DNA of 64,000 nucleotides, from assembly GCA_053919585.1 (NCBI GenBank), contig CM132811.1. One strand, given 5' to 3'. Numbering within the stretch: the stretch's first letter is position 1; each line of letters begins with the position of its first letter. Under the pieces are notes generated by a model, which saw nothing but the letters and a program-made list of their open reading frames with translations, was not told the DNA's origin and ran no database searches. This document shows, in pieces, positions 7,371 through 63,418 of this stretch. The stretch comes from Euprymna scolopes (Eukaryota). The translations under genes and the position numbers were made by a program.

Positions 7371-7410
7371 GTTAATGCTAAAATGTCGTTCTCTTATCAG
7401 ATATACATGA

Positions 7411-7910: not shown

Positions 7911-8040
7911 CGCATCTATTCCCGAAAACTACCATTAAGTTATATATAATGCCATACGCACACAGATATGCTAAATGAACGTAGGAAAATGAACACACTC
8001 ATACATTTACTCACTTCTTTTTTTGCAAAGTGAAATTATC

Positions 8041-14000: not shown

Positions 14001-17000
14001 AAAAGGGTCAAGTAAAAAGGTCCAGTAAAAGCGTCAAATAAAAGGGTCAAGTAAAAAGGTCAAGTAAAAGCGTCAAATAAAAGCGTCAAGTAAAAGCGTC
14101 AAATAAAAGCGTCAAGTAAAAGCGCCAAATAAAAGCGTCAAGTAAAAGCGTCAAATAAAAGGGTCAAGTAAAAACGTCAAGTAAAAGCGTCAAATAAAAG
14201 CGTCAAATAAAAGCGTCAAATAAAAGCGTCAAGTAATAGGGCCAAATAAAAGCGTCAAATAAAAGCGTCAAGTAAAAGCGTCAAGAAAAAGCGTCAAATA
14301 AAAGCGTCAAATAAAAGCGTCAAGTAAAAGCGTCAAATAAAAGCGTCAAGTAAAAGCGTCAAATAAAAGCGTCAAGTAAAACGGTCGAGTAAAAGCGTCA
14401 AATAGAAGCGTCAAATAAAAGCGTCAAGTAAAAGGGTCAAGTAAAAGGGCCAAATAAAAGGGTCAAGTAAAATGGTAAAATAAAAATGTCAAATAAAAGC
14501 GTCAAATAAAAGCGTCAAGTAAAAGCGTCAAATAAAAGCGTCAAGTAAAAGCGTCAAGTAAAAGCGTCAAATAAAAGCGTCAAATAAAAGCGTCAAGCAA
14601 AAGGGTCAAGTAAAAGCGTCAAGTAAAAGCGTCAAATAAAAGCGTCAAATAAAAGCGTCAAGAAAAAGCGTCAAATAAAAGCGTCGAATAAAAGCGTCAA
14701 ATAAAAGCGTCAAATAAAAGCGTCAAGTAAAAGCGTCAAATAAAAGCGTCAAGTAAAAGCGTCAAGTAAAACCGTCAATTAAAAGCGTCAAATAAAAGCG
14801 TCAAGTAAAAGGGTCAAGTAAAAGCGTCAAGTAAAAGCGTCAAATGAAAGCGTCAAATAAAAGCGTCAAGAAAAAGCGTCAACTAAAAGGGTCAAGTAAA
14901 ACCGTCAAATAAAAGCGTCAAGTAAAAGCGTCAAATAAAAGCGTCAAGTAAAAGCGTCAAATAAAAGCGTCAAGTAAAAGCGTCAAATAAAAGCGTCAAG
15001 TAAAGGCGTCAAATAAAAGCGTCAAATAAAAGCGTCAAATAAAAGCGTCAAAACAAAGCGTCAAGTAAAAGCGTCAAATAAAAGCGTGAAGTAAAAGCGT
15101 CAAATAAAAGCGTCCAATAAAAGCGTCAAGTAAAGGCGTCAAATAAAAGCGTCAAATAAAAGCGTCAAGAAAAAGCGTCAAGTAAAAGCGTCAAATAAAA
15201 GCTTCAAATAAAAGCGTCAAATAAAAGCGTCAAGTAAAAGGGTCGAGTAAAAGCGTCAAATAAAAGCGACAAATAAAAGGGTCAAGTAAAAGGGTCAAGT
15301 AAAAGCGTCAAATAAAAGGGTCAAGTAAAAGGGTCAAAATAAGCGTCAAGTAAAAGCGTCAATAAAAGCGTGAAATAAAAGCGTCAAATAAAAGCGTCAA
15401 GTAAAAGGGGCAAGTAAAAGCGTCAAGTAAAAGCGTCACATAAAAGCGTCAAGTAAAAGCGTCAAATAAAAGGGTCAAATAAGAGCGTCAAGTAAAAGCG
15501 TCAAATAAAAGCGTCAAGAAAAAGTGTCAAATAAAAGCGTCAAGTAAAAGCGTCAAATAAAAGCGTCAAGTAAAAGCGTCAAATAAAAGCGTCAAGTAAA
15601 AGCGTCAAATAAAAGCGTCAAGTAAAAGCGTCAAGTAAAGGCGTCAAATAAAAGCGTCAAGTAAAACGGTCGAGTAAAAGCGTCAAATAAAAGCGTCAAA
15701 TAAAAGCGTCAAGTAAAAGGGTCAAGTAAAAGCGTCAAATAAAAGGGTCAAGAAAAAGGGTCAAATAAAAGCGTCAAATAAAAGCGTCAAATAAAAGCGT
15801 CAAGTAAAAGCGTCAAATAAAAGCGTCAAGTAAAAGCGTCAAATAAAAGCGTCAAATAAAAGCGTCAAATAAAAGCGTCAAGTAAAAGGGCCAAATAAAA
15901 GCGTCAAATAAAAGCGTCAAGTAAAAGCGTCAAATAAAAGCGTCAAATAAAAGCGTCAAATAAAAGCGTCAAGTAAAAGCGTCAAATAAAAGCGTCAAGT
16001 AAAAGCGTCAAATAAAAGCGTCAAGTAAAACGGTCGAGTAAAAGCGTCAAATAAAAGCGTCAAATAAAAGCGTCAAGTAAAACGGTCAAGTAAAAGCGTC
16101 AAATAAAAGGGTCAAGTAAAAGGGTAAAATAAAAGCGTCAAATAAAAGCGTCAAGTAAAAGCGTCAAATAAAAGCGTCAAGTAAAAGCGTCAAATAAAAG
16201 CGTCAAATAAAAGCGTCAAAACAAAGCGTCAAGTAAAAGCGTCAAATAAAAGCGTCAAGTAAAAGCGTCAAATAAAAGCGTCAAATAAAAGCCTCAAGTA
16301 AAGGCGTCAAATAAAAGCGTCAAATAAAAGCGTCAAGAAAAAGCGTCAAGTAAAAGCCTCAAATAAAAGCTTCAAATAAAAGCGTCAAATAAATGCGTCA
16401 AGTAAAAGGGTCGAGTAAAAGCGTCAAATAAAAGCGACAAATAAAAGGGTCAAGTAAAAGCGTCAAGTAAAAGCGTCAAATAAAAGCGTCAAGTAAAAGC
16501 GTCAAGTAAAGGCGTCAAATAAAAGCGTCAAATAAAAGCGTCAAATAAAAGCGTCAAAACAAAGCGTCAAGTAAAAGCGTCAAATAAAAGCGTCAAGTAA
16601 AAGCGTCAAATAAAAGCGTCAAATAAAAGCGTCAAGTAAAGGCGTCAAATAAAAGCGTCAAATAAAAGCGTCAAGAAAAAGCGTCAAGTAAAAGCGTCAA
16701 ATAAAAGCTTCAAATAAAAGCGTCAAATAAAAGCGTCAAGTAAAAGGGTCGAGTAAAAGCGTCAAATAAAAGCGACAAATAAAAGGGTCAAGTAAAAGGG
16801 TCAAGTAAAAGCGTCAAATAAAAGGGTCAAGTAAAAGGGTCAAATAAAAGCGTCAAGTAAAAGCGTCAAGTAAAAGCGTGAAATAAAAGCGTCAAATAAA
16901 AGCGTCAAGTAAAAGGGGCAAGTAAAAGCGTCAAGTAAAAGCGTCAAATAAAAGCGTCAAGTAAAAGCGTCAAATAAAAGGGTCAAATAAGAGCGTCAAG

Positions 17001-20000
17001 TAAAAGCGTCAAATATAAGCGTCAAGAAAAAGTGTCAAATAAAAGCGTCAAGTAAAAGCGTAAAATAAAAGCGTCAAGTAAAAGCGTCAAATAAAAGCGT
17101 CAAGTAAAAGCGTCAAATAAAGCGTCAAGTAAAAGCGTCAAATAAAAGCGTCAAGTAAAAGCGTCAAGTAAAAGCGTCAAATAAAAGCGTCAAGTAAAAA
17201 CGTAAAATAAAAGCGTCAAGTAAAAGTGTCAAGTAAAGGCGTCAAATAAAAGCGTCAAGTAAAAGCGTCAAATAAAAGCGTCAAATAAAAGCGTCAAATA
17301 AAGCGTCAAGTAAAGGCGTCAAATAAAAGCGTCAAGTAAAACGGTCGAGTAAAAGCGTCAAATAAAAGCGTCAAATAAAAGCGTCAAGTAAAAGGGTCAA
17401 TTAAAAGCGTCAAATAAAAGGGTCAAGTAAAAGATTAAAATAAAAGCGTCAAATAAAAGCGTCAAATAAAAGCGTCAAGTAAAAGCGTCAAATAAAAGCG
17501 TCAAGTAAAAGCGTCAAATAAAAGCGTCAAATAAAAGCGTCAAATAAAAGCGTCAAGTAAAAGGGCCAAATAAAAGCGTCAAATAAAAGCGTCAAGTAAA
17601 AGCGTCAAGAAAAAGCGTCAAATAAAAGCGTCAAATAAAAGCGTCAAGTAAAAGCGTCAAATAAAAGCGTCAAGTAAAAGCGTCAAATAAAAGCGTCAAG
17701 TAAAACGGTCGAGTAAAAGCGTCAAATAAAAGCGTCAAATAAAAGCGTCAAGTAAAAGGGTCAAGTAAAAGCGTCAAATAAAAGGGTCAAGTAAAAGGGT
17801 AAAATAAAAGCGTCAAATAAAAGCGTCAAATAAAAGCGTCAAGTAAAAGCGTCAAATAAAAGCGTCAAGTAAAAGCGTCAAATAAAAGCGTCAAATAAAA
17901 GCGTCAAATAAAAGCGTCAAAACAAAGCGTCAAGTAAAAGCGTCAAATAAAAGCGTCAAGTAAAAGCGTCAAATAAAAGCGTCAAATAAAAGCGTCAAGT
18001 AAAGGCGTCAAATAAAAGCGTCAAATAAAAGCGTCAAGAAAAAGCGTCAAGTAAAAGCGTCAAATAAAAGCTTCAAATAAAAGCGTCAAATAAAAGCGTC
18101 AAGTAAAAGGGTCGAGTAAAAGCGTCAAATAAAAGCGACAAATAAAAGGGTCAAGTAAAAGGGTCAAGTAAAAGCGTCAAATAAAAGGGTCAAGTAAAAG
18201 GGTCAAATAAAAGCGTCAAGTAAAAGCGTCAAGTAAAAGCGTGAAATAAAAGCGTCAAATAAAAGCGTCAAGTAAAAGGGGCAAGTAAAAGCGTCAAGTA
18301 AAAGCGTCAAGTAAAAGCGTCAAGTAAAAGCGTCAAGTAAAAGCGTCAAGTAAAGGCGTCAAATAAAAGCGTCAAATAAAAGCGTCAAACAAAAGCGTCA
18401 AATAAAAGCGTCAAGTAAAAGCGTCAAGTAAAAGCGTCAAAAAAAAGCGTCAAGTAAAAGCGTCAAATAAAAGCTTCAAATAAAAGCGTCAAATAAAAGC
18501 GTCAAGTAAAAGGGTCGAGTAAAAGCGTCAAATAAAAGCGTCAAATAAAAGGGTCAAGTAAAAGGGTCAAGTAAAAGCGTCAAATAAAATGGTCAAGTAA
18601 AAGGGTCAAATAAAAGCGTCAAATAAAAGCGTCAAATAAAAGGGTCAAGAAAACGCGTCAAATAAAAGCGTCAAGTAAAAGCGTCAAATAAAAGCGTCAA
18701 ATAAAAGCGTCAAATAAAAGGGTCAAGTAAAAAGGTCCAGTAAAAGCGTCAAATAAAAGGGTCAAGTAAAAAGGTCAAGTAAAAGCGTCAAATAAAAGCG
18801 TCAAGTAAAAGCGTCAAATAAAAGCGTCAAGTAAAAGCGCCAAATAAAAGCGTCAAGTAAAAGCGTCAAATAAAAGGGTCAAGTAAAAACGTCAAGTAAA
18901 AGCGTCAAATAAAAGCGTCAAATAAAAGCGTCAAGTAATAGGGCCAAATAAAAGCGTCAAATAAAAGCGTCAAGTAAAAGCGTCAAGAAAAAGCGTCAAA
19001 TAAAAGCGTCAAATAAAAGCGTCAAGTAAAAGCGTCAAATAAAAGCGTCAAGTAAAAGCGTCAAATAAAAGCGTCAAGTAAAACGGTCGAGTAAAAGCGT
19101 CAAATAAAAGCGTCAAATAAAAGCGTCAAGTAAAAGGGTCAAGTAAAAGCGTCAAATAAAAGGGTCAAGTAAAATGGTAAAATAAAAACGTCAAATAAAA
19201 GCGTCAAATAAAAGCGTCAAGTAAAAGCGTCAAATAAAAGCGTCAAGTAAAAGCGTCAAGTAAAAGCGTCAAATAAAAGCGTCAAATAAAAGCGTCAAGT
19301 AAAAAGGTCAAGTAAAAGCGTCAAGTAAAAGCGTCAAATAAAAGCGTCAAATAAAAGCGTCCAGAAAAAGCGTCAAATAAAAGCGTCGAATAAAAGCGTC
19401 AAATAAAAGCGTCAAGTAAAAGCGTCAAATAAAAGCGTCAAGTAAAAGCGTCAAGTAAAAGCGTCAAATAAAAGCGTCAAATAAAAGCGTCAAGTAAAAG
19501 GGTCAAGTAAAAGCGTCAAGTAAAAGCGTCAAATGAAAGCGTCAAATAAAAGCGTCAAGAAAAAGCGTCAACTAAAAGGGTCAAGTAAAACCGTCAAATA
19601 AAAGCGTCAAGTAAAAGCGTCAAATAAAAGCGTCAAGTAAAAGCGTCAAATAAAAGCGTCAAGTAAAAGCGTCAAATAAAAGCGTCAAGTAAAAGCGTCA
19701 AGTAAAGGCGTCAAATAAAAGCGTCAAATAAAAGCGTCAAATAAAAGCGTCAAAACAAAGCGTCAAGTAAAAGCGTCAAATAAAAGCGTGAAGTAAAAGC
19801 GTCAAATAAAAGCGTCAAATAAAAGCGTCAAGTAAAGGCGTCAAATAAAAGCGTCAAATAAAAGCGTCAAGAAAAAGCGTCAAGTAAAAGCGTCAAATAA
19901 AAGCTTCAAATAAAAGCGTCAAATAAAAGCTTCAAGTAAAAGGGTCGAGTAAAAGCGTCAAATAAAAGCGACAAATAAAAGGGTCAAGTAAAAGGGTCAA

Positions 20001-23000
20001 GTAAAAGCGTCAAATAAAAGGGTCAAGTAAAAGGGTCAAATAAAAGCGTCAAGTAAAAGCGTCAAGTAAAAGCGTGAAATAAAAGCGTCAAATAAAAGCG
20101 TCAAGTAAAAGGGGCAAGTAAAAGCGTCAAGTAAAAGCGTCACATAAAAGCGTCAAGTAAAAGCGTCAAATAAAAGGGTCAAATAAGAGCGTCAAGTAAA
20201 AGCGTCAAATAAAAGCGTCAAGAAAAAGTGTCAAATAAAAGCGTCAAGTAAAAGCGTCAAATAAAAGCGTCAAGTAAAAGCGTCAAATAAAAGCGTCAAG
20301 TAAAAGCGTCAAATAAAAGCGTCAAGTAAAAGCGTCAAGTAAAGGCGTCAAATAAAAGCGTCAAGTAAAACGGTCGAGTAAAAGCGTCAAATAAAAGCGT
20401 CAAATAAAAGCGTCAAGTAAAAGGGTCAAGTAAAAGCGTCAAATAAAAGGGTCAAGTAAAAGGGTCAAATAAAAGCGTCAAATAAAAGCGTCAAATAAAA
20501 GCGTCAAGTAAAAGCGTCAAATAAAAGCGTCAAGTAAAAGCGTCAAATAAAAGCGTCAAATAAAAGCGTCAAATAAAAGCGTCAAGTAAAAGGGCCAAAT
20601 AAAAGCGTCAAATAAAAGCGTCAAGTAAAAGCGTCAAGAAAAAGCGTCAAATAAAAGCGTCAAATAAAAGCGTCAAGTAAAAGCGTCAAATAAAAGCGTC
20701 AAGTAAAAGCGTCAAATAAAAGCGTCAAGTAAAACGGTCGAGTAAAAGCGTCAAATAAAAGCGTCAAATAAAAGCGTCAAGTAAAAGCGTCAAATAAAAG
20801 CGTCAAGTAAAAGCGTCAAAAAAAAGCGTCAAGTAAAAGCGTCAAATAAAAGCTTCAAATAAAAGCGTCAAATAAAAGCGTCAAGTAAAAGGGTCGAGTA
20901 AAAGCGTCAAATAAAAGCGTCAAATAAAAGGGTCAAGTAAAAGGGTCAAGTAAAAGCGTCAAATAAAATGGTCAAGTAAAAGGGTCAAATAAAAGCGTCA
21001 AATAAAAGCGTCAAATAAAAGGGTCAAGAAAACGCGTCAAATAAAAGCGTCAAGTAAAAGCGTCAAATAAAAGCGTCAAATAAAAGCGTCAAATAAAAGG
21101 GTCAAGTAAAAAGGTCCAGTAAAAGCGTCAAATAAAAGGGTCAAGTAAAAAGGTCAAGTAAAAGCGTCAAATAAAAGCGTCAAGTAAAAGCGTCAAATAA
21201 AAGCGTCAAGTAAAAGCGCCAAATAAAAGCGTCAAGTAAAAGCGTCAAATAAAAGGGTCAAGTAAAAACGTCAAGTAAAAGCGTCAAATAAAAGCGTCAA
21301 ATAAAAGCGTCAAATAAAAGCGTCAAGTAATAGGGCCAAATAAAAGCGTCAAATAAAAGCGTCAAGTAAAAGCGTCAAGAAAAAGCGTCAAATAAAAGCG
21401 TCAAATAAAAGCGTCAAGTAAAAGCGTCAAATAAAAGCGTCAAGTAAAAGCGTCAAATAAAAGCGTCAAGTAAAACGGTCGAGTAAAAGCGTCAAATAAA
21501 AGCGTCAAATAAAAGCGTCAAGTAAAAGGGTCAAGTAAAAGCGTCAAATAAAAGGGTCAAGTAAAATGGTAAAATAAAAACGTCAAATAAAAGCGTCAAA
21601 TAAAAGCGTCAAGTAAAAGCGTCAAATAAAAGCGTCAAGTAAAAGCGTCAAGTAAAAGCGTCAAATAAAAGCGTCAAATAAAAGCGTCAAGTAAAAAGGT
21701 CAAGTAAAAGCGTCAAGTAAAAGCGTCAAATAAAAGCGTCAAATAAAAGCGTCCAGAAAAAGCGTCAAATAAAAGCGTCGAATAAAAGCGTCAAATAAAA
21801 GCATCAAATAAAAGCGTCAAGTAAAAGCGTCAAATAAAAGCGTCAAGTAAAAGCGTCAAGTAAAAGCGTCAAATAAAAGCGTCAAATAAAAGCGTCAAGT
21901 AAAAGGGTCAAGTAAAAGCGTCAAGTAAAAGCGTCAAATGAAAGCGTCAAATAAAAGCGTCAAGAAAAAGCGTCAACTAAAAGGGTCAAGTAAAACCGTC
22001 AAATAAAAGCGTCAAGTAAAAGCGTCAAATAAAAGCGTCAAGTAAAAGCGTCAAATAAAAGCGTCAAGTAAAAGCGTCAAATAAAAGCGTCAAGTAAAAG
22101 CGTCAAGTAAAGGCGTCAAATAAAAGCGTCAAATAAAAGCGTCAAATAAAAGCGTCAAAACAAAGCGTCAAGTAAAAGCGTCAAATAAAAGCGTGAAGTA
22201 AAAGCGTCAAATAAAAGCGTCAAATAAAAGCGTCAAGTAAAGGCGTCAAATAAAAGCGTCAAATAAAAGCGTCAAGAAAAAGCGTCAAGTAAAAGCGTCA
22301 AATAAAAGCTTCAAATAAAAGCGTCAAATAAAAGCTTCAAGTAAAAGGGTCGAGTAAAAGCGTCAAATAAAAGCGACAAATAAAAGGGTCAAGTAAAAGG
22401 GTCAAGTAAAAGCGTCAAATAAAAGGGTCAAGTAAAAGGGTCAAATAAAAGCGTCAAGTAAAAGCGTCAAGTAAAAGCGTGAAATAAAAGCGTCAAATAA
22501 AAGCGTCAAGTAAAAGGGGCAAGTAAAAGCGTCAAGTAAAAGCGTCACATAAAAGCGTCAAGTAAAAGCGTCAAATAAAAGGGTCAAATAAGAGCGTCAA
22601 GTAAAAGCGTCAAATAAAAGCGTCAAGAAAAAGTGTCAAATAAAAGCGTCAAGTAAAAGCGTCAAATAAAAGCGTCAAGTAAAAGCGTCAAATAAAAGCG
22701 TCAAGTAAAAGCGTCAAATAAAAGCGTCAAGTAAAAGCGTCAAGTAAAGGCGTCAAATAAAAGCGTCAAGTAAAACGGTCGAGTAAAAGCGTCAAATAAA
22801 AGCGTCAAATAAAAGCGTCAAGTAAAAGGGTCAAGTAAAAGCGTCAAATAAAAGGGTCAAGTAAAAGGGTCAAATAAAAGCGTCAAATAAAAGCGTCAAA
22901 TAAAAGCGTCAAGTAAAAGCGTCAAATAAAAGCGTCAAGTAAAAGCGTCAAATAAAAGCGTCAAATAAAAGCGTCAAATAAAAGCGTCAAATAAAAGCGT

Positions 23001-50000: not shown

Positions 50001-53000
50001 CAAGTAAAAGCGTCAAATAAAAGCGTCAAGTAAAAGCGTCAAGTAAAGGCGTCAAATAAAAGCGTCAAATAAAAGCGTCAAATAAAAGCGTCAAAACAAA
50101 GCGTCAAGTAAAAGCGTCAAATAAAAGCGTCAAGTAAAAGCGTGAAATAAAAGCGTCAAATAAAAGCGTCAAGTAAAAGGGGCAAGTAAAAAGGTCAAGT
50201 AAAAGCGTCACATAAAAGCGTCAAGTAAAAGCGTCAAATAAAAGGGTCAAATAAGAGCGTCAAGTAAAAGCGTCAAATAAAAGCGTCAAGAAAAAGTGTC
50301 AAATAAAAGCGTCAAGTAAAAGCGTCAAATAAAAGCGTCAAGTAAAAGCGTCAAATAAAAGCGTCAAGTAAAAGCGTCAAATAAAAGCGTCAAGTAAAAG
50401 CGTCAAGTAAAGGCGTCAAATAAAAGCGTCAAGTAAAACGGTCGAGTAAAAGCGTCAAATAAAAGCGTCAAATAAAAGCGTCAAGTAAAAGGGTCAAGTA
50501 AAAGCGTCAAATAAAAGGGTCAAGTAAAAGGGTCAAATAAAAGCGTCAAATAAAAGCGTCAAATAAAAGCGTCAAGTAAAAGCGTCAAATAAAAGCGTCA
50601 AGTAAAAGCGTCAAATAAAAGCGTCAAATAAAAGCGTCAAATAAAAGCGTCAAGTAAAAGGGCCAAATAAAAGCGTCAAATAAAAGCGTCAAGTAAAAGC
50701 GTCAAGAAAAAGCGTCAAATAAAAGCGTCAAATAAAAGCGTCAAGTAAAAGCGTCAAATAAAAGCGTCAAGTAAAAGCGTCAAATAAAAGCGTCAAGTAA
50801 AACGGTCGAGTAAAAGCGTCAAATAAAAGCGTCAAATAAAAGCGTCAAGTAAAACGGTCAAGTAAAAGCGTCAAATAAAAGGGTCAAGTAAAAGGGTAAA
50901 ATAAAAGCGTCAAATAAAAGCGTCAAATAAAAGCGTCAAGTAAAAGCGTCAAATAAAAGCGTCAAGTAAAAGCGTCAAATAAAAGCGTCAAATAAAAGCG
51001 TCAAATAAAAGCGTCAAAACAAAGCGTCAAGTAAAAGCGTCAAATAAAAGCGTCAAGTAAAAGCGTCAAATAAAAGCGTCAAATAAAAGCCCTAAGTAAA
51101 GGCGTCAAATAAAAGCGTCAAATAAAAGCGTCAAGAAAAAGCGTCAAGTAAAAGCGTCAAATAAAAGCTTCAAATAAAAGCGTCAAATAAATGCGTCAAG
51201 TAAAAGGGTCGAGTAAAAGCGTCAAATAAAAGCGACAAATAAAAGGGTCAAGTAAAAGCGTCAAGTAAAAGCGTCAAATAAAAGCGTCAAGTAAAAGCGT
51301 CAAGTAAAGGCGTCAAATAAAAGCGTCAAATAAAAGCGTCAAATAAAAGCGTCAAAACAAAGCGTCAAGTAAAAGCGTCAAATAAAAGCGTCAAGTAAAA
51401 GCGTCAAATAAATGCGTCAAATAAAAGCGTCAAGTAAAGGCGTCAAATAAAAGCGTCAAAAAAAAGCGTCAAGAAAAAGCGTCAAGTAAAAGCGTCAAAT
51501 AAAAGCTTCAAATAAAAGCGTCAAATAAAAGCGTCAAGTAAAAGGGTCGAGTAAAAGCGTCAAATAAAAGCGACAAATAAAAGGGTCAAGTAAAAGGGTC
51601 AAGTAAAAGCGTCAAATAAAAGGGTCAAGTAAAAGGGTCAAATAAAAGCGTCAAGTAAAAGCGTCAAGTAAAAGCGTGAAATAAAAGCGTCAAATAAAAG
51701 CGTCAAGTAAAAGGGGCAAGTAAAAGCGTCAAGTAAAAGCGTCAAATAAAAGCGTCAAGTAAAAGCGTCAAATAAAAGGGTCAAATAAGAGCGTCAAGTA
51801 AAAGCGTCAAATAAAAGCGTCAAGAAAAAGTGTCAAATAAAAGCGTCAAGTAAAAGCGTAAAATAAAAGCGTCAAGTAAAAGCGTCAAATAAAAGCGTCA
51901 AGTAAAAGCGTCAAATAAAGCGTCAAGTAAAAGCGTCAAATAAAAGCGTCAAGTAAAGGCGTCAAATAAAAGCGTCAAGTAAAACGGTCGAGTAAAAGCG
52001 TCAAATAAAAGCGTCAAATAAAAGCGTCAAGTAAAAGGGTCAAGTAAAAGCGTCAAATAAAAGGGTCAAGTAAAAGATTAAAATAAAAGCGTCAAATAAA
52101 AGCGTCAAATAAAAGCGTCAAGTAAAAGCGTCAAATAAAAGCGTCAAGTAAAAGCGTCAAATAAAAGCGTCAAATAAAAGCGTCAAATAAAAGCGTCAAG
52201 TAAAAGGGCCAAATAAAAGCGTCAAATAAAAGCGTCAAGTAAAAGCGTCAAGAAAAAGCGTCAAATAAAAGCGTCAAATAAAAGCGTCAAGTAAAAGCGT
52301 CAAATAAAAGCGTCAAGTAAAAGCGTCAAATAAAAGCGTCAAGTAAAACGGTCGAGTAAAAGCGTCAAATAAAAGCGTCAAATAAAAGCGTCAAGTAAAA
52401 GGGTCAAGTAAAAGCGTCAAATAAAAGGGTCAAGTAAAAGGGTAAAATAAAAGCGTCAAATAAAAGCGTCAAATAAAAGCGTCAAGTAAAAGCGTCAAAT
52501 AAAAGCGTCAAGTAAAAGCGTCAAATAAAAGCGTCAAATAAAAGCGTCAAATAAAAGAGTCCAAACAAAGCGTCAAGTAAAAGCGTCAAATAAAAGCGTC
52601 AAGTAAAAGCGTCAAATAAAAGCGTCAAATAAAAGCGTCAAGTAAAGGCGTCAAATAAAAGCGTCAAATAAAAGCGTCAAGAAAAAGCGTCAAGTAAAAG
52701 CGTCAAATAAAAGCTTCAAATAAAAGCGTCAAATAAAAGCGTCAAGTAAAAGGGTCGAGTAAAAGCGTCAAATAAAAGCCACAAATAAAAGGGTCAAGTA
52801 AAAGGGTCAAGTAAAAGCGTCAAATAAAAGGGTCAAGTAAAAGGGTCAAATAAAAGCGTCAAGTAAAAGCGTCAAGTAAAAGCGTGAAATAAAAGCGTCA
52901 AATAAAAGCGTCAAGTAAAAGGGGCAAGTAAAAGCGTCAAGTAAAAGCGTCAAGTAAAAGCGTCAAGTAAAGGCGTCAAATAAAAGCGTCAAATAAAAGC

Positions 53001-56000
53001 GTCAAACAAAAGCGTCAAATAAAAGCGTCAAGTAAAAGCGTCAAGTAAAAGCGTCAAATAAAAGCGTCAAGTAAAAGCGTCAAGTAAAAGCGTCAAATAA
53101 AAGCGTCAAATAAAAGCGTCAAGTAAAAGGGTCAAGAAAAAGCGTCAAGTAAAAGCGTCAAATGAAAGCGTCAAATAAAAGCGTCAAGAAAAAGCGTCAA
53201 CTAAAAGGGTCAAGTAAAACCGTCAAATAAAAGCGTCAAGTAAAAGCGTCAAATAAAAGCGTCAAGTAAAAGCGTCAAATAAAAGCGTCAAGTAAAAGCG
53301 TCAAATAAAAGCGTCAAGTAAAAGCGTCAAGTAAAGGCGTCAAATAAAAGCGTCAAATAAAAGCGTCAAATAAAAGCGTCAAAACAAAGCGTCAAGTAAA
53401 AGCGTCAAATAAAAGCGTCAAGTAAAAGCGTCAAATAAAAGCGTCAAATAAAAGCGTCAAGTAAAGGCGTCAAACAAAAGCGTCAAATAAAAGCGTCAAG
53501 AAAAAGCGTCAAGTAAAAGCGTCAAATAAAAGCTTCAAATAAAAGCGTCAAATAAAAGCGTCAAGTAAAAGGGTCGAGTAAAAGCGTCAAATAAAAGCGA
53601 CAAATAAAAGGGTCAAGTAAAAGGGTCAAGTAAAAGCGTCAAATAAAAGGGTCAAGTAAAAGGGTCAAATAAAAGCGTCAAGTAAAAGCGTCAAGTAAAA
53701 GCGTGAAATAAAAGCGTAAAATAAAAGCGTCAAGTAAAAGGGGCAAGTAAAAGCGTCAAGTAAAAGCGACACATAAAAGCGTCAAGTAAAAGCGTCAAAT
53801 AAAAGGGTCAAATAAGAGCGTCAAGTAAAAGCGTCAAATAAAAGCGTCAAATAAAAGCGTCAAATAAAAGCGTCAAGTAAAAGGGCCAAATAAAAGCGTC
53901 AAGTAAAAGCGTCAAGAAAAAGCGTCAAGTAAAAGCGTCAAATAAAAGCGTCAAGAAAAAGTGTCAAATAAAAGCGTCAAGTAAAAGCGTAAAATAAAAG
54001 CGTCAAGTAAAAGCGTCAAATAAAAGCGTCAAGTAAAAGCGTCAAATAAAGCGTCAAGTAAAAGCGTCAAATAAAAGCGTCAAGTAAAGGCGTCAAATAA
54101 AAGCGTCAAGTAAAACGGTCGAGTAAAAGCGTCAAATAAAAGCGTCAAATAAAAGCGTCAAGTAAAAGGGTCAAGTAAAAGCGTCAAATAAAAGGGTCAA
54201 GTAAAAGATTAAAATAAAAGCGTCAAATAAAAGCGTCAAATAAAAGCGTCAAGTAAAAGCGTCAAATAAAAGCGTCAAGTAAAAGCGTCAAATAAAAGCG
54301 TCAAATAAAAGCGTCAAATAAAAGCGTCAAGTAAAAGGGCCAAATAAAAGCGTCAAATAAAAGCGTCAAGTAAAAGCGTCAAGAAAAAGCGTCAAATAAA
54401 AGCGTCAAATAAAAGCGTCAAGTAAAAGCGTCAAATAAAAGCGTCAAGTAAAAGCGTCAAATAAAAGCGTCAAGTAAAACGGTCGAGTAAAAGCGTCAAA
54501 TAAAAGCGTCAAATAAAAGCGTCAAGTAAAAGGGTCAAGTAAAAGCGTCAAATAAAAGGGTCAAGTAAAAGGGTAAAATAAAAGCGTCAAATAAAAGCGT
54601 CAAATAAAAGCGTCAAGTAAAAGCGTCAAATAAAAGCGTCAAGTAAAAGCGTCAAATAAAAGCGTCAAATAAAAGCGTCAAATAAAAGAGTCAAAACAAA
54701 GCGTCAAGTAAAAGCGTCAAATAAAAGCGTCAAGTAAAAGCGTCAAATAAAAGCGTCAAATAAAAGCGTCAAGTAAAGGCGTCAAATAAAAGCGTCAAAT
54801 AAAAGCGTCAAGAAAAAGCGTCAAGTAAAAGCGTCAAATAAAAGCTTCAAATAAAAGCGTCAAATAAAAGCGTCAAGTTAAAGGGTCGAGTAAAAGCGTC
54901 AAATAAAAGCCACAAATAAAAGGGTCAAGTAAAAGGGTCAAGTAAAAGCGTCAAATAAAAGGGTCAAGTAAAAGGGTCAAATAAAAGCGTCAAGTAAAAG
55001 CGTCAAGTAAAAGCGTGAAATAAAAGCGTCAAATAAAAGCGTCAAGTAAAAGGGGCAAGTAAAAGCGTCAAGTAAAAGCGTCAAGTAAAAGCGTCAAGTA
55101 AAAGCGTCAAGTAAAGGCGTCAAATAAAAGCGTCAAATAAAAGCGTCAAACAAAAGCGTCAAATAAAAGCGTCAAGTAAAAGCGTCAAGTAAAAGCGTCA
55201 AATAAAAGCGTCAAGTAAAAGCGTCAAGTAAAAGCGTCAAATAAAAGCGTCAAATAAAAGCGTCAAGTAAAAGGGTCAAGAAAAAGCGTCAAGTAAAAGC
55301 GTCAAATGAAAGCGTCAAATAAAAGCGTCAAGAAAAAGCGTCAACTAAAAGGGTCAAGTAAAACCGTCAAATAAAAGCGTCAAGTAAAAGCGTCAAATAA
55401 AAGCGTCAAGTAAAAGCGTCAAATAAAAGCGTCAAGTAAAAGCGTCAAATAAAAGCGTCAAGTAAAAGCGTCAAGTAAAGGCGTCAAATAAAAGCGTCAA
55501 ATAAAAGCGTCAAATAAAAGCGTCAAAACAAAGCGTCAAGTAAAAGCGTCAAATAAAAGCGTCAAGTAAAAGCGTCAAATAAAAGCGTCAAATAAAAGCG
55601 TCAAGTAAAGGCGTCAAATAAAAGCGTCAAATAAAAGCGTCAAGAAAAAGCGTCAAGTAAAAGCGTCAAATAAAAGCTTCAAATAAAAGCGTCAAATAAA
55701 AGCGTCAAGTAAAAGGGTCGAGTAAAAGCGTCAAATAAAAGCGACAAATAAAAGGGTCAAGTAAAAGGGTCAAGTAAAAGCGTCAAATAAAAGGGTCAAG
55801 TAAAAGGGTCAAATAAAAGCGTCAAGTAAAAGCGTCAAGTAAAAGCGTGAAATAAAAGCGTAAAATAAAAGCGTCAAGTAAAAGGGGCAAGTAAAAGCGT
55901 CAAGTAAAAGCGACACATAAAAGCGTCAAGTAAAAGCGTCAAATAAAAGGGTCAAATAAGAGCGTCAAGTAAAAGCGTCAAATAAAAGCGTCAAATAAAA

Positions 56001-59000
56001 GCGTCAAATAAAAGCGTCAAGTAAAAGGGCCAAATAAAAGCGTCAAGTAAAAGCGTCAAGAAAAAGCGTCAAATAAAAGCGTCAAATAAAAGCGTCAAGT
56101 AAAAGCGTCAAATAAAAGCGTCAAGTAAAAGCGTCAAATAAAAGCGTCAAGTAAAACGGTCGAGTAAAAGCGTCAAATAAAAGCGTCAAATAAAAGCGTC
56201 AAGTAAAACGGTCAAGTAGAAGCGTCAAATAAAAGGGTCAAGTAAAAGGGTAAAATAAAAGCGTCAAATAAAAGCGTCAAATAAAAGCGTCAAGTAAAAG
56301 CGTCAAATAAAAGCGTCAAATAAAAGCGTCAAATAAAAGCGTCAAATAAAAGCGTCAAATAAAAGCGTCAAAACAAAGCGTCAAGTAAAAGGGTCAAGTA
56401 AAAGCGTCAAGTAAAAGCGTCAAATAAAAGCGTCAAATAAAAGCGTCAAGAAAAAGTGTCAAATAAAAGCGTCGAATAAAAGCGTCAAATAAAAGCGTCA
56501 AATAAAAGCGTCAAGTAAAAGCGTCAAATAAAAGCGTCAAGTAAAAGCGTCAAGTAAAAGCGTCAAATAAAAGCGTCAAATAAAAGCGTCAAGTAAAAGG
56601 GTCAAGAAAAAGCGTCAAGTAAAAGCGTCAAATGAAAGCGTCAAATAAAAGCGTCAAGAAAAAGCGTCAACTAAAAGGGTCAAGTAAAACCGTCAAATAA
56701 AAGCGTCAAGTAAAAGCGTCAAATAAAAGCGTCAAGTAAAAGCGTCAAATAAAAGCGTCAAGTAAAAGCGTCAAATAAAAGCGTCAAGTAAAAGCGTCAA
56801 GTAAAGGCGTCAAATAAAAGCGTCAAATAAAAGCGTCAAATAAAAGCGTCAAAACAAAGCGTCAAGTAAAAGCGTCAAATAAAAGCGTCAAGTAAAAGCG
56901 TCAAATAAAAGCGTCAAATAAAAGCGTCAAGTAAAGGCGTCAAATAAAAGCGTCAAATAAAAGCGTCAAGAAAAAGCGTCAAGTAAATGCGTCAAATAAA
57001 AGCTTCAAATAAAAGCGTCCAATAAAAGCGTCAAGTAAAAGGATCGAGTAAAAGCGTCAAATAAAAGCGACAAATAAAAGGGTCAAGTAAAAGGGTCAAG
57101 TAAAAGCGTCAAATAAAAGGGTCAAGTAAAAGGGTAAAATAAAAGCGTCAAGTAAAAGCGTCAAGTAAAAGCGTCAAGTAAAAGCGTGAAATAAAAGCGT
57201 CAAATAAAAGCGTCAAGTAAAAGGGGCAAGTAAAAGCGTCAAGTAAAAGCGTCACATAAAAGCGTCAAGTAAAAGCGTCAAATAAAAGGGTCAAATAAGA
57301 GCGTCAAGTAAAAGCGTCAAATAAAAGCGTCAAATAAAAGCGTCAAATAAAAGCGTCAAGTAAAAGGGCCAAATAAAAGCGTCAAATAAAAGCGTCAAGT
57401 AAAAGCGTCAAGAAAAAGCGTCAAATAAAAGCGTCAAATAAAAGCGTCAAGTAAAAGCGTCAAATAAAAGCGTCAAGTAAAAGCGTCAAATAAAAGCGTC
57501 AAGTAAAACGGTCGAGTAAAAGCGTCAAATAAAAGCGTCAAATAAAAGCGTCAAGTAAAACGGTCAAGTAAAAGCGTCATATAAAAGGGTCAAGTAAAAT
57601 GGTAAAATAAAAGCGTCAAATAAAAGCGTCAAATAAAAGCGTCAAGTAAAAGCGTCAAATAAAAGCGTCAAGTAAAAGCGTCAAATAAAAGCGTCAAATA
57701 AAAGCGTCAAATAAAAGCGTCAAATAAAAGCGTCAAAACAAAGCGTCAAGTAAAAGCGTCAAATAAAAGCGTCAAGTAAAAGCGTCAAATAAAAGCGTCA
57801 AATAAAAGCCTCAAGTAAAGGCGTCAAATAAAAGCGTCAAATAAAAGCGTCAAGAAAAGGCGTCAAGTAAAAGCGTCAAATAAAAGCTTCAAATAAAAGC
57901 GTCAAATAAATGCGTCAAGTAAAAGGGTCGAGTAAAAGCGTCAAATAAAAGCGACAAATAAAAGGGTCAAGTAAAAGCGTCAAGTAAAAGCGTCAAATAA
58001 AAGCGTCAAGTAAAAGCGTCAAGTAAAGGCGTCAAATAAAAGCGTCAAATAAAAGCGTCAAATAAAAGCGTCAAAACAAAGCGTCAAATAAAAGCGTCAA
58101 ATAAAAGCGTCAAGTAAAAGCGTCAAATAAAAGCGTCAAATAAAAGCGTCAAGTAAAGGCGTCAAATAAAAGCGTCAAAACAAAGCGTCAAGAAAAAGCG
58201 TCAAGTAAAAGCGTCAAATAAAAGCTTCAAATAAAAGCGTCAAATAAAAGCGTCAAGTAAAAGGGTCGAGTAAAAGCGTCAAATAAAAGCGACAAATAAA
58301 AGGGTCAAGTAAAAGGGTCAAGTAAAAGCGTCAAATAAAAGGGTCAAGTAAAAGGGTCAAATAAAAGCGTCAAGTAAAAGCGTCAAGTAAAAGCGTGAAA
58401 TAAAAGCGTCAAGAAAAAGTGTCAAATAAAAGTGTCAAATAAAAGCGTCAAGAAAAAGTGTCAAATAAAAGTGTCAAATAAAAGCGTCAAGTAAAAGCGT
58501 CAAATAAAAGCGTCAAATAAAAGCGTCAAATAAAAGCGTCAAGTAAAAGCGTCAAATAAAGCGTCAAGTAAAAGCGTCAAGTAAAGGCGTCAAATAAAAG
58601 CGTCAAGTAAAACGGTCGAGTAAAAGCGTCAAATAAAAGCGTCAAATAAAAGCGTCAAGTAAAAGGGTCAAGTAAAAGCGTCAAATAAAAGGGTCAAGTA
58701 AAAGGGTAAAATAAAAGCGTCAAATAAAAGCGTCAAATAAAAGCGTCAAGTAAAAGCGTCAAATAAAAGCGTCAAGTAAAAGCGTCAAATAAAAGCGTCA
58801 AATAAAAGCGTCAAATAAAAGCGTCAAGTAAAAGGGCCAAATAAAAGCGTCAAATAAAAGCGTCAAGTAAAAGCGTCAAGAAAAAGCGTCAAATAAAAGC
58901 GTCAAATAAAAGCGTCAAGTAAAAGCGTCAAATAAAAGCGTCAAGTAAAAGCGTCAAATAAAAGCGTCAAGTAAAACGGTCGAGTAAAAGCGTCAAATAA

Positions 59001-60940
59001 AAGCGTCAAATAAAAGCGTCAAGTAAAAGGGTCAAGTAAAAGCGTCAAATAAAAGGGTCAAGTAAAAGGGTAAAATAAAAGCGTCAAATAAAAGCGTCAA
59101 ATAAAAGCGTCAAGTAAAAGCGTCAAATAAAAGCGTCAAGTAAAAGCGTCAAATAAAAGCGTCAAATAAAAGCGTTAAATAAAAGCGTCAAAACAAAGCG
59201 TCAAGTAAAAGCGTCAAATAAAAGCGTCAAGTAAAAGCGTCAAATAAAAGCGTCAAATAAAAGCGTCAAGTAAAGGCGTCAAATGAAAGCGTCAAATAAA
59301 AGCGTCAAGAAAAAGCGTCAAGTAAAAGCGTCAAATAAAAGCTTCAAATAAAAGCGTCAAATAAAAGCGTCAAGTAAAAGGGTCGAGTAAAAGCGTCAAA
59401 TAAAAGCGACAAATAAAAGGGTCAAGTAAAAGGGTCAAGTAAAAGCGTCAAATAAAAGGGTCAAGTAAAAGGGTCAAATAAAAGCGTCAAGTAAAAGCGT
59501 CAAGTAAAAGCGTGAAATAAAAGCGTGAAATAAAAGCGTCAAGTAAAAGGGGCAAGTAAAAGCGTCAAGTAAAAGCGTCAAGTAAAAGCGTCAAGTAAAG
59601 GCGTCAAATAAAAGCGTCAAATAAAAGCGTCAAACAAAAGCGTCAAATAAAAGCGTCAATAAAAGCGTCAAGTAAAAGCGTCAAGTAAAAGTGTCAAGTA
59701 AAAGCGTCAAGTAAAGGCGTCAAATAAAAGCGTCAAATAAAAGGGTCAAATAAAAGCGTCAAATAAAAGCGTCAAGTAAAAGCGTCAAATAAAAGCGTCA
59801 AATAAAAGCGTCAAGTAAAGGCGTCAAATAAAAGCGTCAAATAAAAGCGTCAAGAAAAAGCGTCAAGTAAAAGCGTCAAATAAAAGCTTCAAATAAAAGC
59901 GTCAAATAAAAGCGTCAAGTAAAAGGGTCGAGTAAAAGCGTAAAATAAAAGCGTCAAATAAAAGGGTCAAGTAAAAGGGTCAAGTAAAAGCGTCAAATAA
60001 AAGGGTCAAGTAAAAGGGTCAAATAAAAACGTCAAATAAAAGCGTCAAATAAAAGCGTCAAGAAAAAGCGTCAAATAAAAGCGTCAAATAAAAGCGTCAA
60101 ATAAAAGGGTCAAGTAAAAAGGTCAAGTAAAAGCGTCAAATAAAGGGGTCAAGTAAAAAGGTCAAGTAAAAGCGTCAAATAAAAGCGTCAAGAAAAAGCG
60201 TCAAATAAAAGCGTCAAATAAAAGCGTCAAATAAAAGGGTCAAGTAAAAAGGTCAAGTAAAAGCGTCAAATAAAAGGGTCAAGTAAAAAGGTCAAGTAAA
60301 AGCGTCAAATAAAAGCGTCAAGTAAAAGCGTCAAATAAAAGCGTCAAGTAAAAGCGTCAAATAAAAGCGTCAAGTAAATATGTCAAATAAAAGCGTCAAA
60401 TAAAAGCGTCAAATAAAAGCGTATAATAAAAGCGTCAAATAAAAGGGTCAAGTAAAAAGGTCAAGTAAAAGCGTCAAATAAAAGCGTCAAGTAAAAGCGT
60501 CATATAAAAGCGTCAAGAAAAAGCGTCAAATAAATGGGTCAAGTAAAAGCGTCAAATAAAAGCGTCAAATAAAAGCGTCAAATAAAAGCGTCAAGAAAAA
60601 GCGTCAAATAAAAGGGTCAAGTAAAAGCGTCAAATAAAAGCGTCAAATAAAAGCGTCAAATAAAAGCGTCAAGTAAAAGCGTCAAATAAAAGCGTCAAGT
60701 AAAAGCGTCAAGTAAAAACGTCAAGTAAAAGCGTCAAATAAAAGCGTCAAATAAAAGCGTCAAATAAAAGCGTCAAGTAAAAGCGTCAAATAAAAGCGTC
60801 AAGTAAAAGCGTCAAGAAAAAGCGTCAAATAAAAGCGTCAAGTAAAAGCGTCAAATAAAAGCGTCAAGTAAAAGCGTCAAATAAAAGCGTCAAATAAAAG
60901 CGTCAAGTAAAATGGTCAAGTAAAAGCGTCAAGAAAAAGG
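8041..60940 (+). repeat. Satellite DNA array, 13-bp monomer TAAAAGCGTCAA(A/G), ~52.9 kb, ~4,070 head-to-tail copies with higher-order structure
   Basis: Continuous 13-bp periodicity from agcgtcaagt at 8041 to aagaaaaagg at ~60940, in a single orientation, with no insertions or N gaps seen. One position is A/G dimorphic. Rare variants recur in conserved order (GGGTC, GCTTC, GGTCGA, GCGAC, GGGGC, GGGCC, AACT). Confidence 0.99.
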
Positions 60941-61336
60941 GGACACCATAACTTATGTGATTGGCTACAAACAACGTAAGACTTCTTTTTTCTATAAAAA
61001 CAAGACAGCATTTATATTATAAAACGAATGCTTTTGTTCCTTAATTAATTACGTTTATTTACAAATAAACAAACGTGCCTAAGATATTCCGGTTTTGTCA
61101 CACTGAATCTTTCTTTTTCTCCACAAGTCTCTATGCCTGCCATACTCATTTCTCTCCCGGGAATCCCAAAGACACCTTATCAAATTAAGCTTTTGTTTAC
61201 GTCGTCCGATATCAGCTTTGTCGTAAAAGTCCGTGACCTGATTCCTAATCACAGCTTTCTTAGACTATTATTTTGTCGATCGTTCTTTTCAACCTGTGAG
61301 GGACAAGGAATGTTTCCGCTTTACCGTTTCTTTCTA

Positions 61337-61751
61337 AAATGCCCAGTCGGTATTCCCCGGTAAGAGCGCCTCAGGAGATTAGCAATAAACTAACCTTGCA
61401 GACAACACGGGTTCAAAACGTGCATCCTGTCTAATAACACTGGAAAAAAGGAAAATAAAAACCTCAGCTTTCGAAACGCCCATAAAATACAAATGAATAC
61501 TTTACTCTTTGCAAATAACTTTTCTTATACATACAAATATTTTTATCTTCAGCCCCCCCCCCCCGCCAAATCAACAGAGATAAGACAATTCCTGTAATGA
61601 CCTGGACCCTGTTCATTGCGGTGTCATGCTGGTTCTTTGTATTTCTAGGAGGTGCTCTCTCCCAGGCTTGGTCTTCTCTTTCTTTGAGGAGGGATTAGTT
61701 TATTGCTAATCGCCTGAGGCGCTCTTACCGGAGAATACCGACTGGGCAGCC
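61337..61751. mobile_element. MITE, 415 bp, ~57-bp terminal inverted repeats, probable TA target-site duplication
   Basis: tgcccagtcggtattccccggtaagagcgcctcaggagattagcaataaactaa (61340-61393) is inverted at 61695-61748 with 2 mismatches. TA lies at 61335-61336 and 61752-61753. The outermost 3 bp are mismatched. Confidence 0.85.
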
Positions 61752-62037
61752 TAGACATTTTTTAAATTTTTTGCAGCTCAGAGTGCTCCTCCTTGTTGAC
61801 GCTGACTTCTCAATCACACTTTCAGAACCTGGTTTGATAGTTCTTGCGATGGGTGAGAACTAAATCCCCTTACGGACATAAGATCACGAACTGATATCCA
61901 GTCAAGTCCTGTTTTCAAGAGACGATGTCCACTCATTCCAATAGCAACCAATCAAAATCCAAGGAACAGACTTGTCCATTTAAACATCCTAGCATGTTTA
62001 TATGCCAACTCTATGCGTTCTGATTTCTATCCATTTA

Positions 62038-63285: not shown

Positions 63286-63418
63286 TCAAATATAGTGTCT
63301 ATATAACTCGACCAAACAATCACACACGCTACATGTTGTGTGTGGATAAATATGTCTGTTGATGGGTATGCATAATGCCTAAATAACAATGCAGTTCACA
63401 ATCGTCTATATAAACGTG

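What the first reader, a model, noticed from the sequence alone, without database searches (positions are those of the whole stretch)
14880..59600. Nested higher-order repeats: 13 bp to 26-33-mers to a ~92-mer (~1.2 kb)
Seen: rare variants recur in fixed order. GGTCGA-type monomers start at 26183, 26612, 26976 and 27379, spacings of 33, 28 and 31 monomers that sum to 92. The GCTTC variant recurs at 1196 bp (26144-27340, 44891-46087), 1183 bp (31443-32626) and 1209 bp (22308-23517). It also recurs at exactly 338 bp, or 26 monomers (16369-16707, 23517-23855, 27340-27678, 32626-32964, 57886-58224). Inference: an ancestral ~30-monomer unit was triplicated, diverged and then amplified. This is alpha-satellite-like HOR logic built on a minisatellite-sized monomer. 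338 bp is close to two nucleosome repeat lengths, which is speculative.
Basis: partly seen in the sequence, partly recalled or inferred. Interest (0 to 1): 0.72.

Follow-up and report, generated by a model that had tools for sequence, protein, structure and literature searches.

The report
Mosaic higher-order 13-bp satellite array
A 53-kb run of a 13-base repeat in a large mollusc (cephalopod) genome is built from kilobase-sized blocks of repeats copied, shortened and recombined many times; this is a clean but ordinary product of unequal exchange in tandem DNA, with no sign of a function.

Summary
Window 8037-60933 is one non-coding array of about 4,071 copies of TAAAAGCGTCAA[A/G], in a single orientation. 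Rare monomer variants recur in a fixed order.

Unit copies are 98.7-99.6% identical, against about 89% between monomers. 91.6% of monomers lie in blocks of 40 or more monomers that recur; monomer shuffles give none.

- The 92-mer (33+28+31 monomers, 1196 bp) is real but never tandemly repeated. It is one of at least five unit types (26, about 64, about 92, about 111 and 124 monomers, plus hybrids up to 290).
- Autocorrelation shows no peak at 91-93 monomers and only weak peaks at 26-33. The strongest peak is at 841 monomers, from a roughly 7.4-kb duplication about 99.8% identical.
- The 26-mer is a head-plus-tail deletion derivative that always follows the 92-mer. It is not a base period.
- Two of the three sub-blocks are clear paralogues; the third is weaker.

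The best reading is nested, in-register unequal exchange, duplication and deletion (Smith 1976), as in human HSat2/3, which has kilobase units on 5-bp monomers. The nucleosome idea has no support. Earlier notes of this scan record several similar variant-coded satellites elsewhere in this genome. Read-level validation was not possible.

The parts
8037..60933 (+). Whole tandem array of the 13-bp monomer TAAAAGCGTCAA[A/G]. About 4,071 monomers in a single orientation, with very few indels.
   Evidence: TRF, 13-bp periodicity profile, wraparound alignment, constant AT and GC skew.
8037..11608 (+). Older, poorly homogenised left edge. It holds many private variants.
   Evidence: 8-11 private variants per 154 monomers in the two bins covering 8037-12036, against 0-2 in most core bins. 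Symbol map. 8037-10568 is not covered by any recurring block.
9948..13791 (+). Short tandem units of 36-51 monomers (9948, 10608, 11141, the tail of the unit starting at 11609, and 13285). They already end in the E.F (AAGCTT) tail.
   Evidence: Symbol map split at the F landmark.
11609..59919 (+). Homogenised core. About 42 units each start with the GGGTCGAG ('I') head and end with the '...B.,E.F.,' tail. Unit lengths run from 26 to 290 monomers.
26178..27373 (+). Example of unit type alpha1 (92 monomers, 1196 bp). Its sub-blocks are I33 (26178-26606), D28 (26607-26970) and D31 (26971-27373). Other near-full copies start at 15235, 22342, 31477, 34010 and 44925. Embedded or truncated copies end at 40272, 51200 and 57919.
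   Evidence: The six copies are 99.5% identical. D28 and D31 heads differ at 2 of 208 bp.
27374..27711 (+). Example of unit type beta (26 monomers, 338 bp), made of head monomers 1-4 fused to the last 22 tail monomers. There are nine copies (16403, 23551, 27374, 32660, 35193, 40273, 46121, 51201, 57920), each immediately after an alpha1-type unit.
   Evidence: 99.6% identity, no gaps.
24721..26177 (+). Example of unit type gamma (110-112 monomers). Copies are at 13792, 18507, 20886 and 24721, with a partial copy at 11609.
   Evidence: 98.7% identity.
35531..37140 (+). Example of unit type epsilon (124 monomers, carrying inherited 12-bp monomers). A second copy is at 46459. Parts of it occur inside the hybrid units at 27712 and 32998.
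42845..43676 (+). Example of unit type delta (63-64 monomers). Copies are at 42845, 52747 and 54878.
34000..41394 (+). Copy A of a recent duplication of about 7.4 kb spanning several units.
   Evidence: Lag 841 monomers is the strongest autocorrelation peak. 509-monomer block. At offsets 10915 and 10928 there are about 13-15 substitutions and one 13-bp indel.
44915..52322 (+). Copy B of the same duplication, about 99.8% identical to copy A.
31334..36607 (+). Tandem duplication with a 2,533-bp offset: 31334-34074 against 33867-36607. There are 21 mismatches in 2741 bp.
59920..60933 (+). Right edge. It has no head/tail units, only a short local 'G..AT.AT' pattern and private variants.

Best explanation
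This is a single-locus, non-coding satellite (long minisatellite-type) array. Its variant 'code' records how it grew.

A 13-bp monomer with a loose A/G alternation at its last base first formed units of about 36-51 monomers, which survive at the left edge. Sub-blocks headed by a TCGA-bearing monomer then duplicated and diverged. Units of 64-124 monomers bounded by a GGGTCGAG head and an AAGCTT tail arose from these.

Those units and multi-unit blocks were then repeatedly duplicated, shortened and recombined. All events kept the 13-bp register. The likely processes are unequal sister-chromatid or homologue exchange, or replication-coupled template switching. The most recent events are a 2.5-kb tandem duplication and a 7.4-kb duplication 10.9 kb away.

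The landmarks are passive markers carried along with the blocks. No function is needed to explain the pattern.

Shown: the anatomy, the identities and the hierarchy. Inferred: the molecular mechanism and the order of events.
For: - Unit copies are 98.7-99.6% identical, against about 89% between monomers.
- There are several unit types that share head and tail. Hybrids have junctions that fall between whole monomers, for example 'B.,E|K.,N,X' and 'H.,|K.,N'.
- Nine beta units equal head(4) plus tail(22).
- Inherited 12-bp monomers recur at fixed offsets of 233 and 10,928 bp.
- Recurring blocks sit at many irregular lags: 64, 81, 119, 149-170, 195, 241, 267, 295, 391 and 841 monomers.
- Private variants are concentrated at the array edges and the core is homogenised.
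- 91.6% of monomers lie in recurring blocks.
- There is no ORF over 48 aa and no Rfam match in the 5.7 kb of the array that was scanned. A stop codon (TAA on the + strand, TGA on the - strand) occurs in every monomer.
- This matches the established unequal-crossover model of tandem arrays (Smith 1976, cited in PMC4022460) and the kilobase units on 5-bp monomers in HSat2/3.
Against: - No read-level confirmation of the assembly was possible.
- The mechanism is inferred from the pattern alone. Gene conversion and break-induced replication would leave similar traces.
- Genome-wide copy number and chromosomal position are unknown, so a role such as heterochromatin or centromere cannot be excluded.
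- The weak excess at lags 26-33 could also reflect some constraint on landmark spacing.
Confidence: 0.85

Rival explanations
1. A regular alpha-satellite-like HOR array. A 92-monomer (about 1.2 kb) unit made by triplication of a ~30-mer was amplified in tandem, possibly with a centromeric role or a role in phasing nucleosomes.
For: - The 92-mer unit and its 33/28/31 sub-blocks exist and are 99.5% conserved.
- The D28 and D31 heads are nearly identical.
- There is a weak autocorrelation excess at lags 26-33.
Against: - There is no autocorrelation peak at 91-93 monomers (0.02-0.03 against a shuffle mean of 0.021).
- No window anywhere shows stringent periodicity at 26-33 or 91-92 monomers.
- Alpha1 units are never adjacent to each other and are interspersed with four other unit types.
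- Landmark spacing ranges from 18 to 67 monomers.
- There are no data on chromatin or centromere position.
Confidence: 0.05
2. Assembly artefact. The mosaic, and especially the 7.4-kb near-identical duplicate, was created by mis-joining or duplicating long reads in a hard-to-assemble satellite.
For: - Satellite arrays are error-prone in assemblies.
- The duplicate is about 99.8% identical.
- No reads could be laid.
Against: - The duplicate copies differ by about 13-15 substitutions plus a one-monomer indel. They are not identical.
- The same unit types recur in different neighbourhoods, each with its own private variants.
- The hierarchy is coherent from the edges to the core.
Confidence: 0.07
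3. The array is the internal tandem-repeat cargo of a mobile element, or grew out of one, as other satellites in this genome are reported to have done. Its structure would then reflect element-borne amplification.
For: - Scan notes report many TE-born satellites in this genome. These notes are leads only.
- A 20-bp T-rich motif ending in CTATAAAAA lies on both sides of the array, at 7834-7852 and 60981-61000 (E = 0.014).
- A monomer-like 13-mer lies in a 150-bp repeat about 1 kb upstream.
Against: - Neither flank feature exceeds chance. The best flank match to the monomer scores 19 of 26, against 18 of 26 in the other flank.
- There are no Pfam domains in flank ORFs.
- 53 kb is far larger than known element-borne arrays.
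- The flanks show no extended homology to each other.
Confidence: 0.03

Closest known systems
Human satellites 2 and 3 (e.g. DYZ1/HSat3A6 with a 3.6-kb unit, HSat2A2 with a 1.77-kb unit, pTRS-47 with a 1366-bp unit), described in PMC4022460
   Same: Kilobase-scale repeat units are superimposed on a very short diverged monomer (5 bp there, 13 bp here). The units are defined by ordered variant monomers and restriction-site landmarks.
   Different: HSat2/3 arrays are megabase-sized, pericentromeric and largely regular in period. This is a single 53-kb array whose units have several lengths and are never iterated as one fixed multimer. The monomer sequence is unrelated.
Alpha-satellite higher-order repeats (primate centromeres)
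   Same: Copies of a multimeric unit are much more alike (over 99%) than the monomers within it (about 89%). The edges are more divergent than the homogenised core. Hybrid and deleted unit variants arise by unequal exchange.
   Different: The monomer there is 171 bp, not 13 bp. Canonical HORs repeat with one fixed period over hundreds of kilobases. Here autocorrelation shows no unit-length peak, and there is no evidence of centromere function.
Minisatellite variant-repeat (MVR) codes of hypervariable minisatellites (own knowledge, not tested here)
   Same: The monomer is in the 10-60-bp size range, and interspersed variant repeats form an internal map that records duplication and conversion history.
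   Different: This array is much longer (about 4,000 repeats) and shows several nested duplication levels up to 10.9 kb. No population data are available.
Smith (1976) unequal-crossover model of repeated DNA (reference 29 in PMC4022460)
   Same: It predicts spontaneous emergence of higher-order periodicities, homogenised cores and divergent edges without selection, which is exactly the pattern seen.
   Different: It is a model, not a sequence family. The actual mechanism here was not observed.
Other variant-coded satellites noted by this scan in the same genome (e.g. s1-295650, s1-244913, s1-280755)
   Same: Long local arrays of short monomers (29-51 bp) with ordered cassettes of variant monomers copied as large blocks.
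   Different: They have different monomers and loci. This one has the shortest monomer among the scan notes I retrieved, and the deepest nesting I could document. Those notes are unchecked by me.

Membership tests
Satellite/minisatellite tandem array | Head-to-tail copies of one monomer in one orientation, non-coding | tested here: met
   TRF 8041-60939 with 89-90% matches. 4,071 monomers in register. Constant skew. No ORF over 48 aa.
Higher-order repeat (HOR) organisation, broad sense | Multimeric units whose copies are far more similar to each other than their constituent monomers are | tested here: met
   Unit identity is 98.7-99.6%, against 88.8-89.6% between monomers. Shuffles give zero matching windows.
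Regular alpha-satellite-type HOR array | One multimer iterated in tandem with a fixed period, giving an autocorrelation peak at the unit length | tested here: not met
   No peak at 91-93 monomers. No stringent 26-33 or 91-92 periodicity anywhere. Alpha1 units are never adjacent.
Regular alpha-satellite-type HOR array | Centromeric location or CENP-A association | not testable with these tools
   No chromosome coordinates or chromatin data are available.
   D28 against D31: 2 mismatches in 208 bp, which is clear. I33 against the D blocks: 10-11 mismatches with 1-3 shared variants, against a median of 14. I-context against D-context: 6.0 of 16 matches against 3.3 +/- 0.14, but the copies are not independent.
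TE-born satellite (as reported elsewhere in this genome) | Monomer traceable to flanking element sequence, with the array starting in register inside it | tested here: not met
   The best flank match to the monomer is no better than chance (19 of 26 against 18 of 26). No Pfam domain in the flank ORFs.

The most novel reading that the evidence does not exclude
The landmark monomers (the TCGA-bearing I/D heads and the AAGCTT tail) and their preferred spacing of 18-34 monomers are maintained by selection, for example as phased binding sites for a heterochromatin or centromere protein. On this reading the satellite is a chromosome-specific functional array in a group (cephalopods) for which I found no described centromeric satellite in two literature searches.
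Probability: 0.04. Interest if true: 0.6.

Novelty: new member of a known kind. Interest (0 to 1): 0.25.

Why it matters
It is a clear worked example of a tandem array of a very short monomer acquiring several nested levels of order: 13 bp, then sub-blocks of about 30 monomers, then units of 26-124 monomers, then super-units of about 300 monomers, then a 10.9-kb-offset duplication. The older stages are still visible at the array edge. That makes it useful for teaching, for benchmarking HOR-detection software on irregular (mosaic) HORs, and as a marker-rich locus for studying array turnover between individuals. It does not open a new biological question. The pattern is what the unequal-exchange model predicts, and similar arrays seem common in this genome.

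Tried and rejected
- Base-level autocorrelation. It was useless beyond about 1 kb because rare 12-bp monomers shift the phase. I replaced it with a monomer-space analysis.
- Greedy monomer parsing. It went out of phase around 13250-15313. I replaced it with a wraparound dynamic-programming alignment.
- Laying reads. 
- Metagenome scan for three consecutive monomers: 0 hits.
- Paper search for the monomer as a string: only chance primer matches.
- Paper searches for cephalopod or squid satellites: nothing specific.
- Scan-notes look-up by sequence: blank.
- Origin of the monomer in the flanks: no match above chance.
- Pfam on flank ORFs: nothing.
- Rfam on the array: nothing.
- A gap-free pairwise difference matrix of alpha1-beta compounds. 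It was distorted by one-monomer indels, so I did not use it for dating.
- CpG-decay signature. The CpG in each monomer is largely intact (C>T 1.4%, G>A 0.1%), so this gives no evidence about methylation-driven decay.
Full report
WHAT IS THERE

The window is AT-rich eukaryotic DNA. Earlier notes of this scan describe the genome as a 5.9-Gb mollusc, probably a squid or other cephalopod. I did not verify that.

From 8037 to 60933 the window is a single tandem array of a 13-bp monomer, TAAAAGCGTCAA[A/G]. TRF reports 8041-60939 with 89-90% matches and essentially no indels. The 13-bp self-identity is 0.85-0.92 in every full 1-kb bin between 8001 and 60000 and drops to about 0.3 outside the array. 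AT skew (+0.54) and GC skew (+0.17) are constant, so the array has one orientation and no inversions.

A wraparound alignment to the consensus gives about 4,071 monomers of 121 types:
- Two types, ending in A or G, make up 67% of the array.
- The next most common is the GCG>GGG variant (270 copies).
- Some 40 further variants occur 5-120 times each.
- The only length variant of note is a 12-bp monomer (19 copies), which is itself inherited at fixed offsets.

The array is non-coding. Every monomer carries TAA on the + strand and TGA on the - strand. The longest ORF in 52.9 kb is 48 aa. Rfam finds nothing in the 5.7 kb of the array that I scanned.

CHECK OF THE OBSERVATION

The four TCGA-bearing monomers at 26183, 26612, 26976 and 27379 are spaced 33, 28 and 31 monomers apart. 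GCTTC is present at all 15 cited positions. Successive GCTTC sites are 338 bp apart nine times, 1196 bp apart twice and 1183 bp apart twice.

I wrote the array as one symbol per monomer and broke the line at the GGGTCGAG monomer, or after the AAGCTT monomer. This makes the order visible directly. From 11609 to 59919 the array consists of about 42 units. Each begins 'I.JAA.AC,K...' (or the variant head 'I..AA.kC') and ends '...B.,E.F.,'.

Units of one type are nearly identical:
- alpha1 (92 monomers, six near-full copies): 99.5%
- beta (26 monomers, nine copies): 99.6%
- gamma (110-112 monomers, five copies): 98.7%
- for comparison, adjacent monomers are 88.8% identical and random monomer pairs 89.6%

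With a stringent local test, hundreds of monomers lie in 24-monomer windows with at least 70% of variant monomers matched at particular lags. Five monomer shuffles gave no such window at any lag. 91.6% of all monomers lie in blocks of 40 or more monomers that recur elsewhere in the array.

The result is mixed. The shuffled control gives 0.021 +/- 0.004 with a maximum of 0.037.
- Lags 26, 28, 31 and 33 give 0.04-0.055, a weak but real excess.
- Lags 91-93 give 0.02-0.03, which is no peak.
- The global maximum is at lag 841 monomers (0.184).
- No stringent periodicity exists anywhere at 26-33 or 91-92 monomers.

The reason is structural. The 92-mer (alpha1) is real, but it is one of at least five unit types and is never adjacent to another alpha1. 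The unit types are:
- alpha1, 90-93 monomers
- alpha2, 81-105 monomers, with the same head and a different middle
- beta, 26 monomers
- gamma, 110-112 monomers
- delta, 63-64 monomers
- epsilon, 124 monomers
- hybrids of 169, 241 and 290 monomers, whose internal junctions join whole monomers of different units (for example '...B.,E|K.,N,X...')

The 338-bp recurrence is not a base period. It is the beta unit, which equals the first four head monomers fused to the last 22 monomers of the gamma/delta-type tail. Beta always directly follows a unit of the alpha1 type (nine times). Where that alpha1 is full length, the pair forms a 118-monomer compound. This accounts for the small peaks at lags 118-119. 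The copy at 16403 keeps the ',E' state of the parental tail, while seven of the others share a derived 'EE' and the copy at 57920 reads 'HE'. Beta is therefore best read as a deletion derivative, not an ancestral unit.

WHAT IS RIGHT ABOUT THE NESTING

Sub-blocks headed by a TCGA monomer (I = GGGTCGAG, D = CGGTCGAG) cluster at 18, 26, 28, 31 and 33-34 monomers. Longer classes occur at 45 and 66-67 monomers.

Within one alpha1 unit, the heads of the two D-blocks (lag 28) differ at 2 of 208 bp. The median for the best 16-monomer window at other lags is 14 mismatches. That is a clear internal duplication.

The I-block aligns with the D-blocks only over the motif [I/D].[J/.][A/,][A/V].A[C/R], with 10-11 mismatches. 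Its homology is plausible but weaker. Contexts after I and after D match at 6.0 of 16 positions, against 3.3 +/- 0.14 for random anchors. This figure is inflated because the copies are not independent.

D-blocks come in four paralogous flavours. They are distinguished by the eighth monomer (GGGTCAAA, GGGTAAAA, ATGGTAAAA or GATTAAAA), and these differ from one another by one or two bases.

- The left edge (8037-13791) is rich in private variants: 8-11 per 154 monomers in the first 4 kb, against 0-2 in most of the core. It contains five tandem units of only 36-51 monomers that already end in the E.F tail. Pieces of these units (',c,UB,', 'B..e,') reappear inside core units. The edge therefore looks like a preserved earlier stage.
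- Between 13792 and 27711 the order gamma, alpha1, (beta), alpha2 recurs four times at spacings of 168-363 monomers (peaks at lags 295 and 362-365).
- 31334-34074 is tandemly duplicated at an offset of 2,533 bp, with 21 mismatches in 2741 bp.
- About 34000-41394 is duplicated at about 44915-52322, with roughly 13-15 substitutions and one 13-bp indel, or about 99.8% identity.

MECHANISM

All junctions respect the 13-bp register. Units share heads and tails, deleted and hybrid units abound, the core is homogenised and the edges are divergent. This is the signature expected from repeated unequal exchange (or replication-coupled slippage or template switching) in a tandem array. It is the Smith 1976 model, cited as reference 29 in PMC4022460.

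The landmarks are most simply passive markers copied with their blocks. The anatomy is shown. The mechanism and the order of events are inferred.

The CpG in each monomer is largely intact. A loose A/G alternation at the last base gives a weak 26-bp dimer tendency, with P(A|G) = 0.68 against a base frequency of 0.55. Nothing supports nucleosome phasing, since landmark spacing is variable.

CONTEXT

The flanks have no Pfam-recognisable ORFs and no convincing seed for the monomer. They share only a 20-bp T-rich motif (E = 0.014). I found no evidence that the array was born from a transposable element, unlike several satellites reported elsewhere in this genome by the scan.

A metagenome scan for the monomer trimer found nothing. 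The monomer does not appear as a described satellite in the paper library.

Sequencing-run look-up found the stretch 6200-9200 partly in DNA runs of the same organism (share 0.36). Small shares (0.07-0.12) appeared in four other coded organisms. I worked beside those places afterwards and sent none of their letters to any search tool. The assembly of the array is therefore not validated by reads. Arguments against an artefact are that duplicate copies differ by private substitutions and that unit types recur in different neighbourhoods.

COMPARISON WITH WHAT IS KNOWN

Kilobase-scale units superimposed on very short monomers have been known since the 1980s for human HSat2/3: the 3.6-kb DYZ1 unit made of pentamers, the 1.77-kb HSat2 unit and the 1366-bp pTRS-47 (PMC4022460).

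The contrast between unit-level and monomer-level identity, and between homogenised core and divergent edges, is the defining behaviour of alpha-satellite HORs.

Internal variant maps of minisatellites are a further analogue (from my own knowledge).

This array meets the broad definition of HOR organisation. It fails the narrower one of a single multimer iterated with a fixed period. It is best called a mosaic or irregular HOR array.

The scan's own notes list several other variant-coded satellites in the same genome. One follow-up (s1-295650) reached the same 'passive marker copied with large blocks' reading on another array. Those notes are leads, not evidence.

VERDICT

This is a new member of a known kind. 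Interest is low to moderate: a tidy, deeply nested example, but what the standard model predicts.

Noticed in passing
window 62951-63066 (-) and 63189-63287 (-): Two 5S rRNA-like copies about 230 bp apart. They score 64.9 and 39.6 bits against a gathering score of 38, and both match the full model length. The surrounding 75-, 42- and 34-nt direct repeats are 90-92% identical. This may be a fragment of a 5S rDNA array, or pseudogenes, or a 5S-derived element.
   Followed up: partly
window 61333-61393 / 61695-61755: Inverted repeat with 61-nt arms, 92% complementary, 301 nt apart. It looks like a MITE or fold-back element, about 400 bp to the right of the array.
   Followed up: no
window 62035-62115 and 7410-7434: A short perfect-ish palindrome with 27-nt arms. 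Rfam scores it as mir-548-like, well below the gathering score (41.5 against 90 bits), which is typical of a mariner-derived MITE terminal repeat. A 25-nt identical copy lies in the left flank, exactly where the read laying filter tripped (7407-7442).
   Followed up: no
The inverted repeat is real (4731-4830 against 5149-5248, about 80%). Rfam at E <= 0.1 over 1-8100 reported no hammerhead family.
   Followed up: partly
window 6813-7104: A 150-bp tandem repeat (1.9 copies, 80% identity) whose unit contains a 13-mer one deletion away from the satellite monomer. It scores 19 of 26 against the monomer dimer, no better than the best chance match in the other flank (18 of 26). It is probably coincidence, but it is a possible seed.
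   Followed up: partly
window 7834-7852 and 60981-61000: A T-rich 20-bp motif ending in CTATAAAAA lies on both sides of the array, 185 bp to its left and 47 bp to its right (95% identity, E = 0.014). The left copy is followed by a sequence resembling the GGGTCG-type monomer. It is not significant on its own.
   Followed up: partly
window 2083-2168: An 86-bp perfect palindromic low-complexity stretch that gives sub-threshold mir-297-like Rfam hits on both strands. It is probably a dinucleotide-rich simple repeat.
   Followed up: no
(runs for window 6200-9200): Four other coded organisms (B-E) hold 7-12% of the sampled 31-mers of the flank-plus-array stretch. If those words come from the satellite, the monomer is shared between species.
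   Followed up: no
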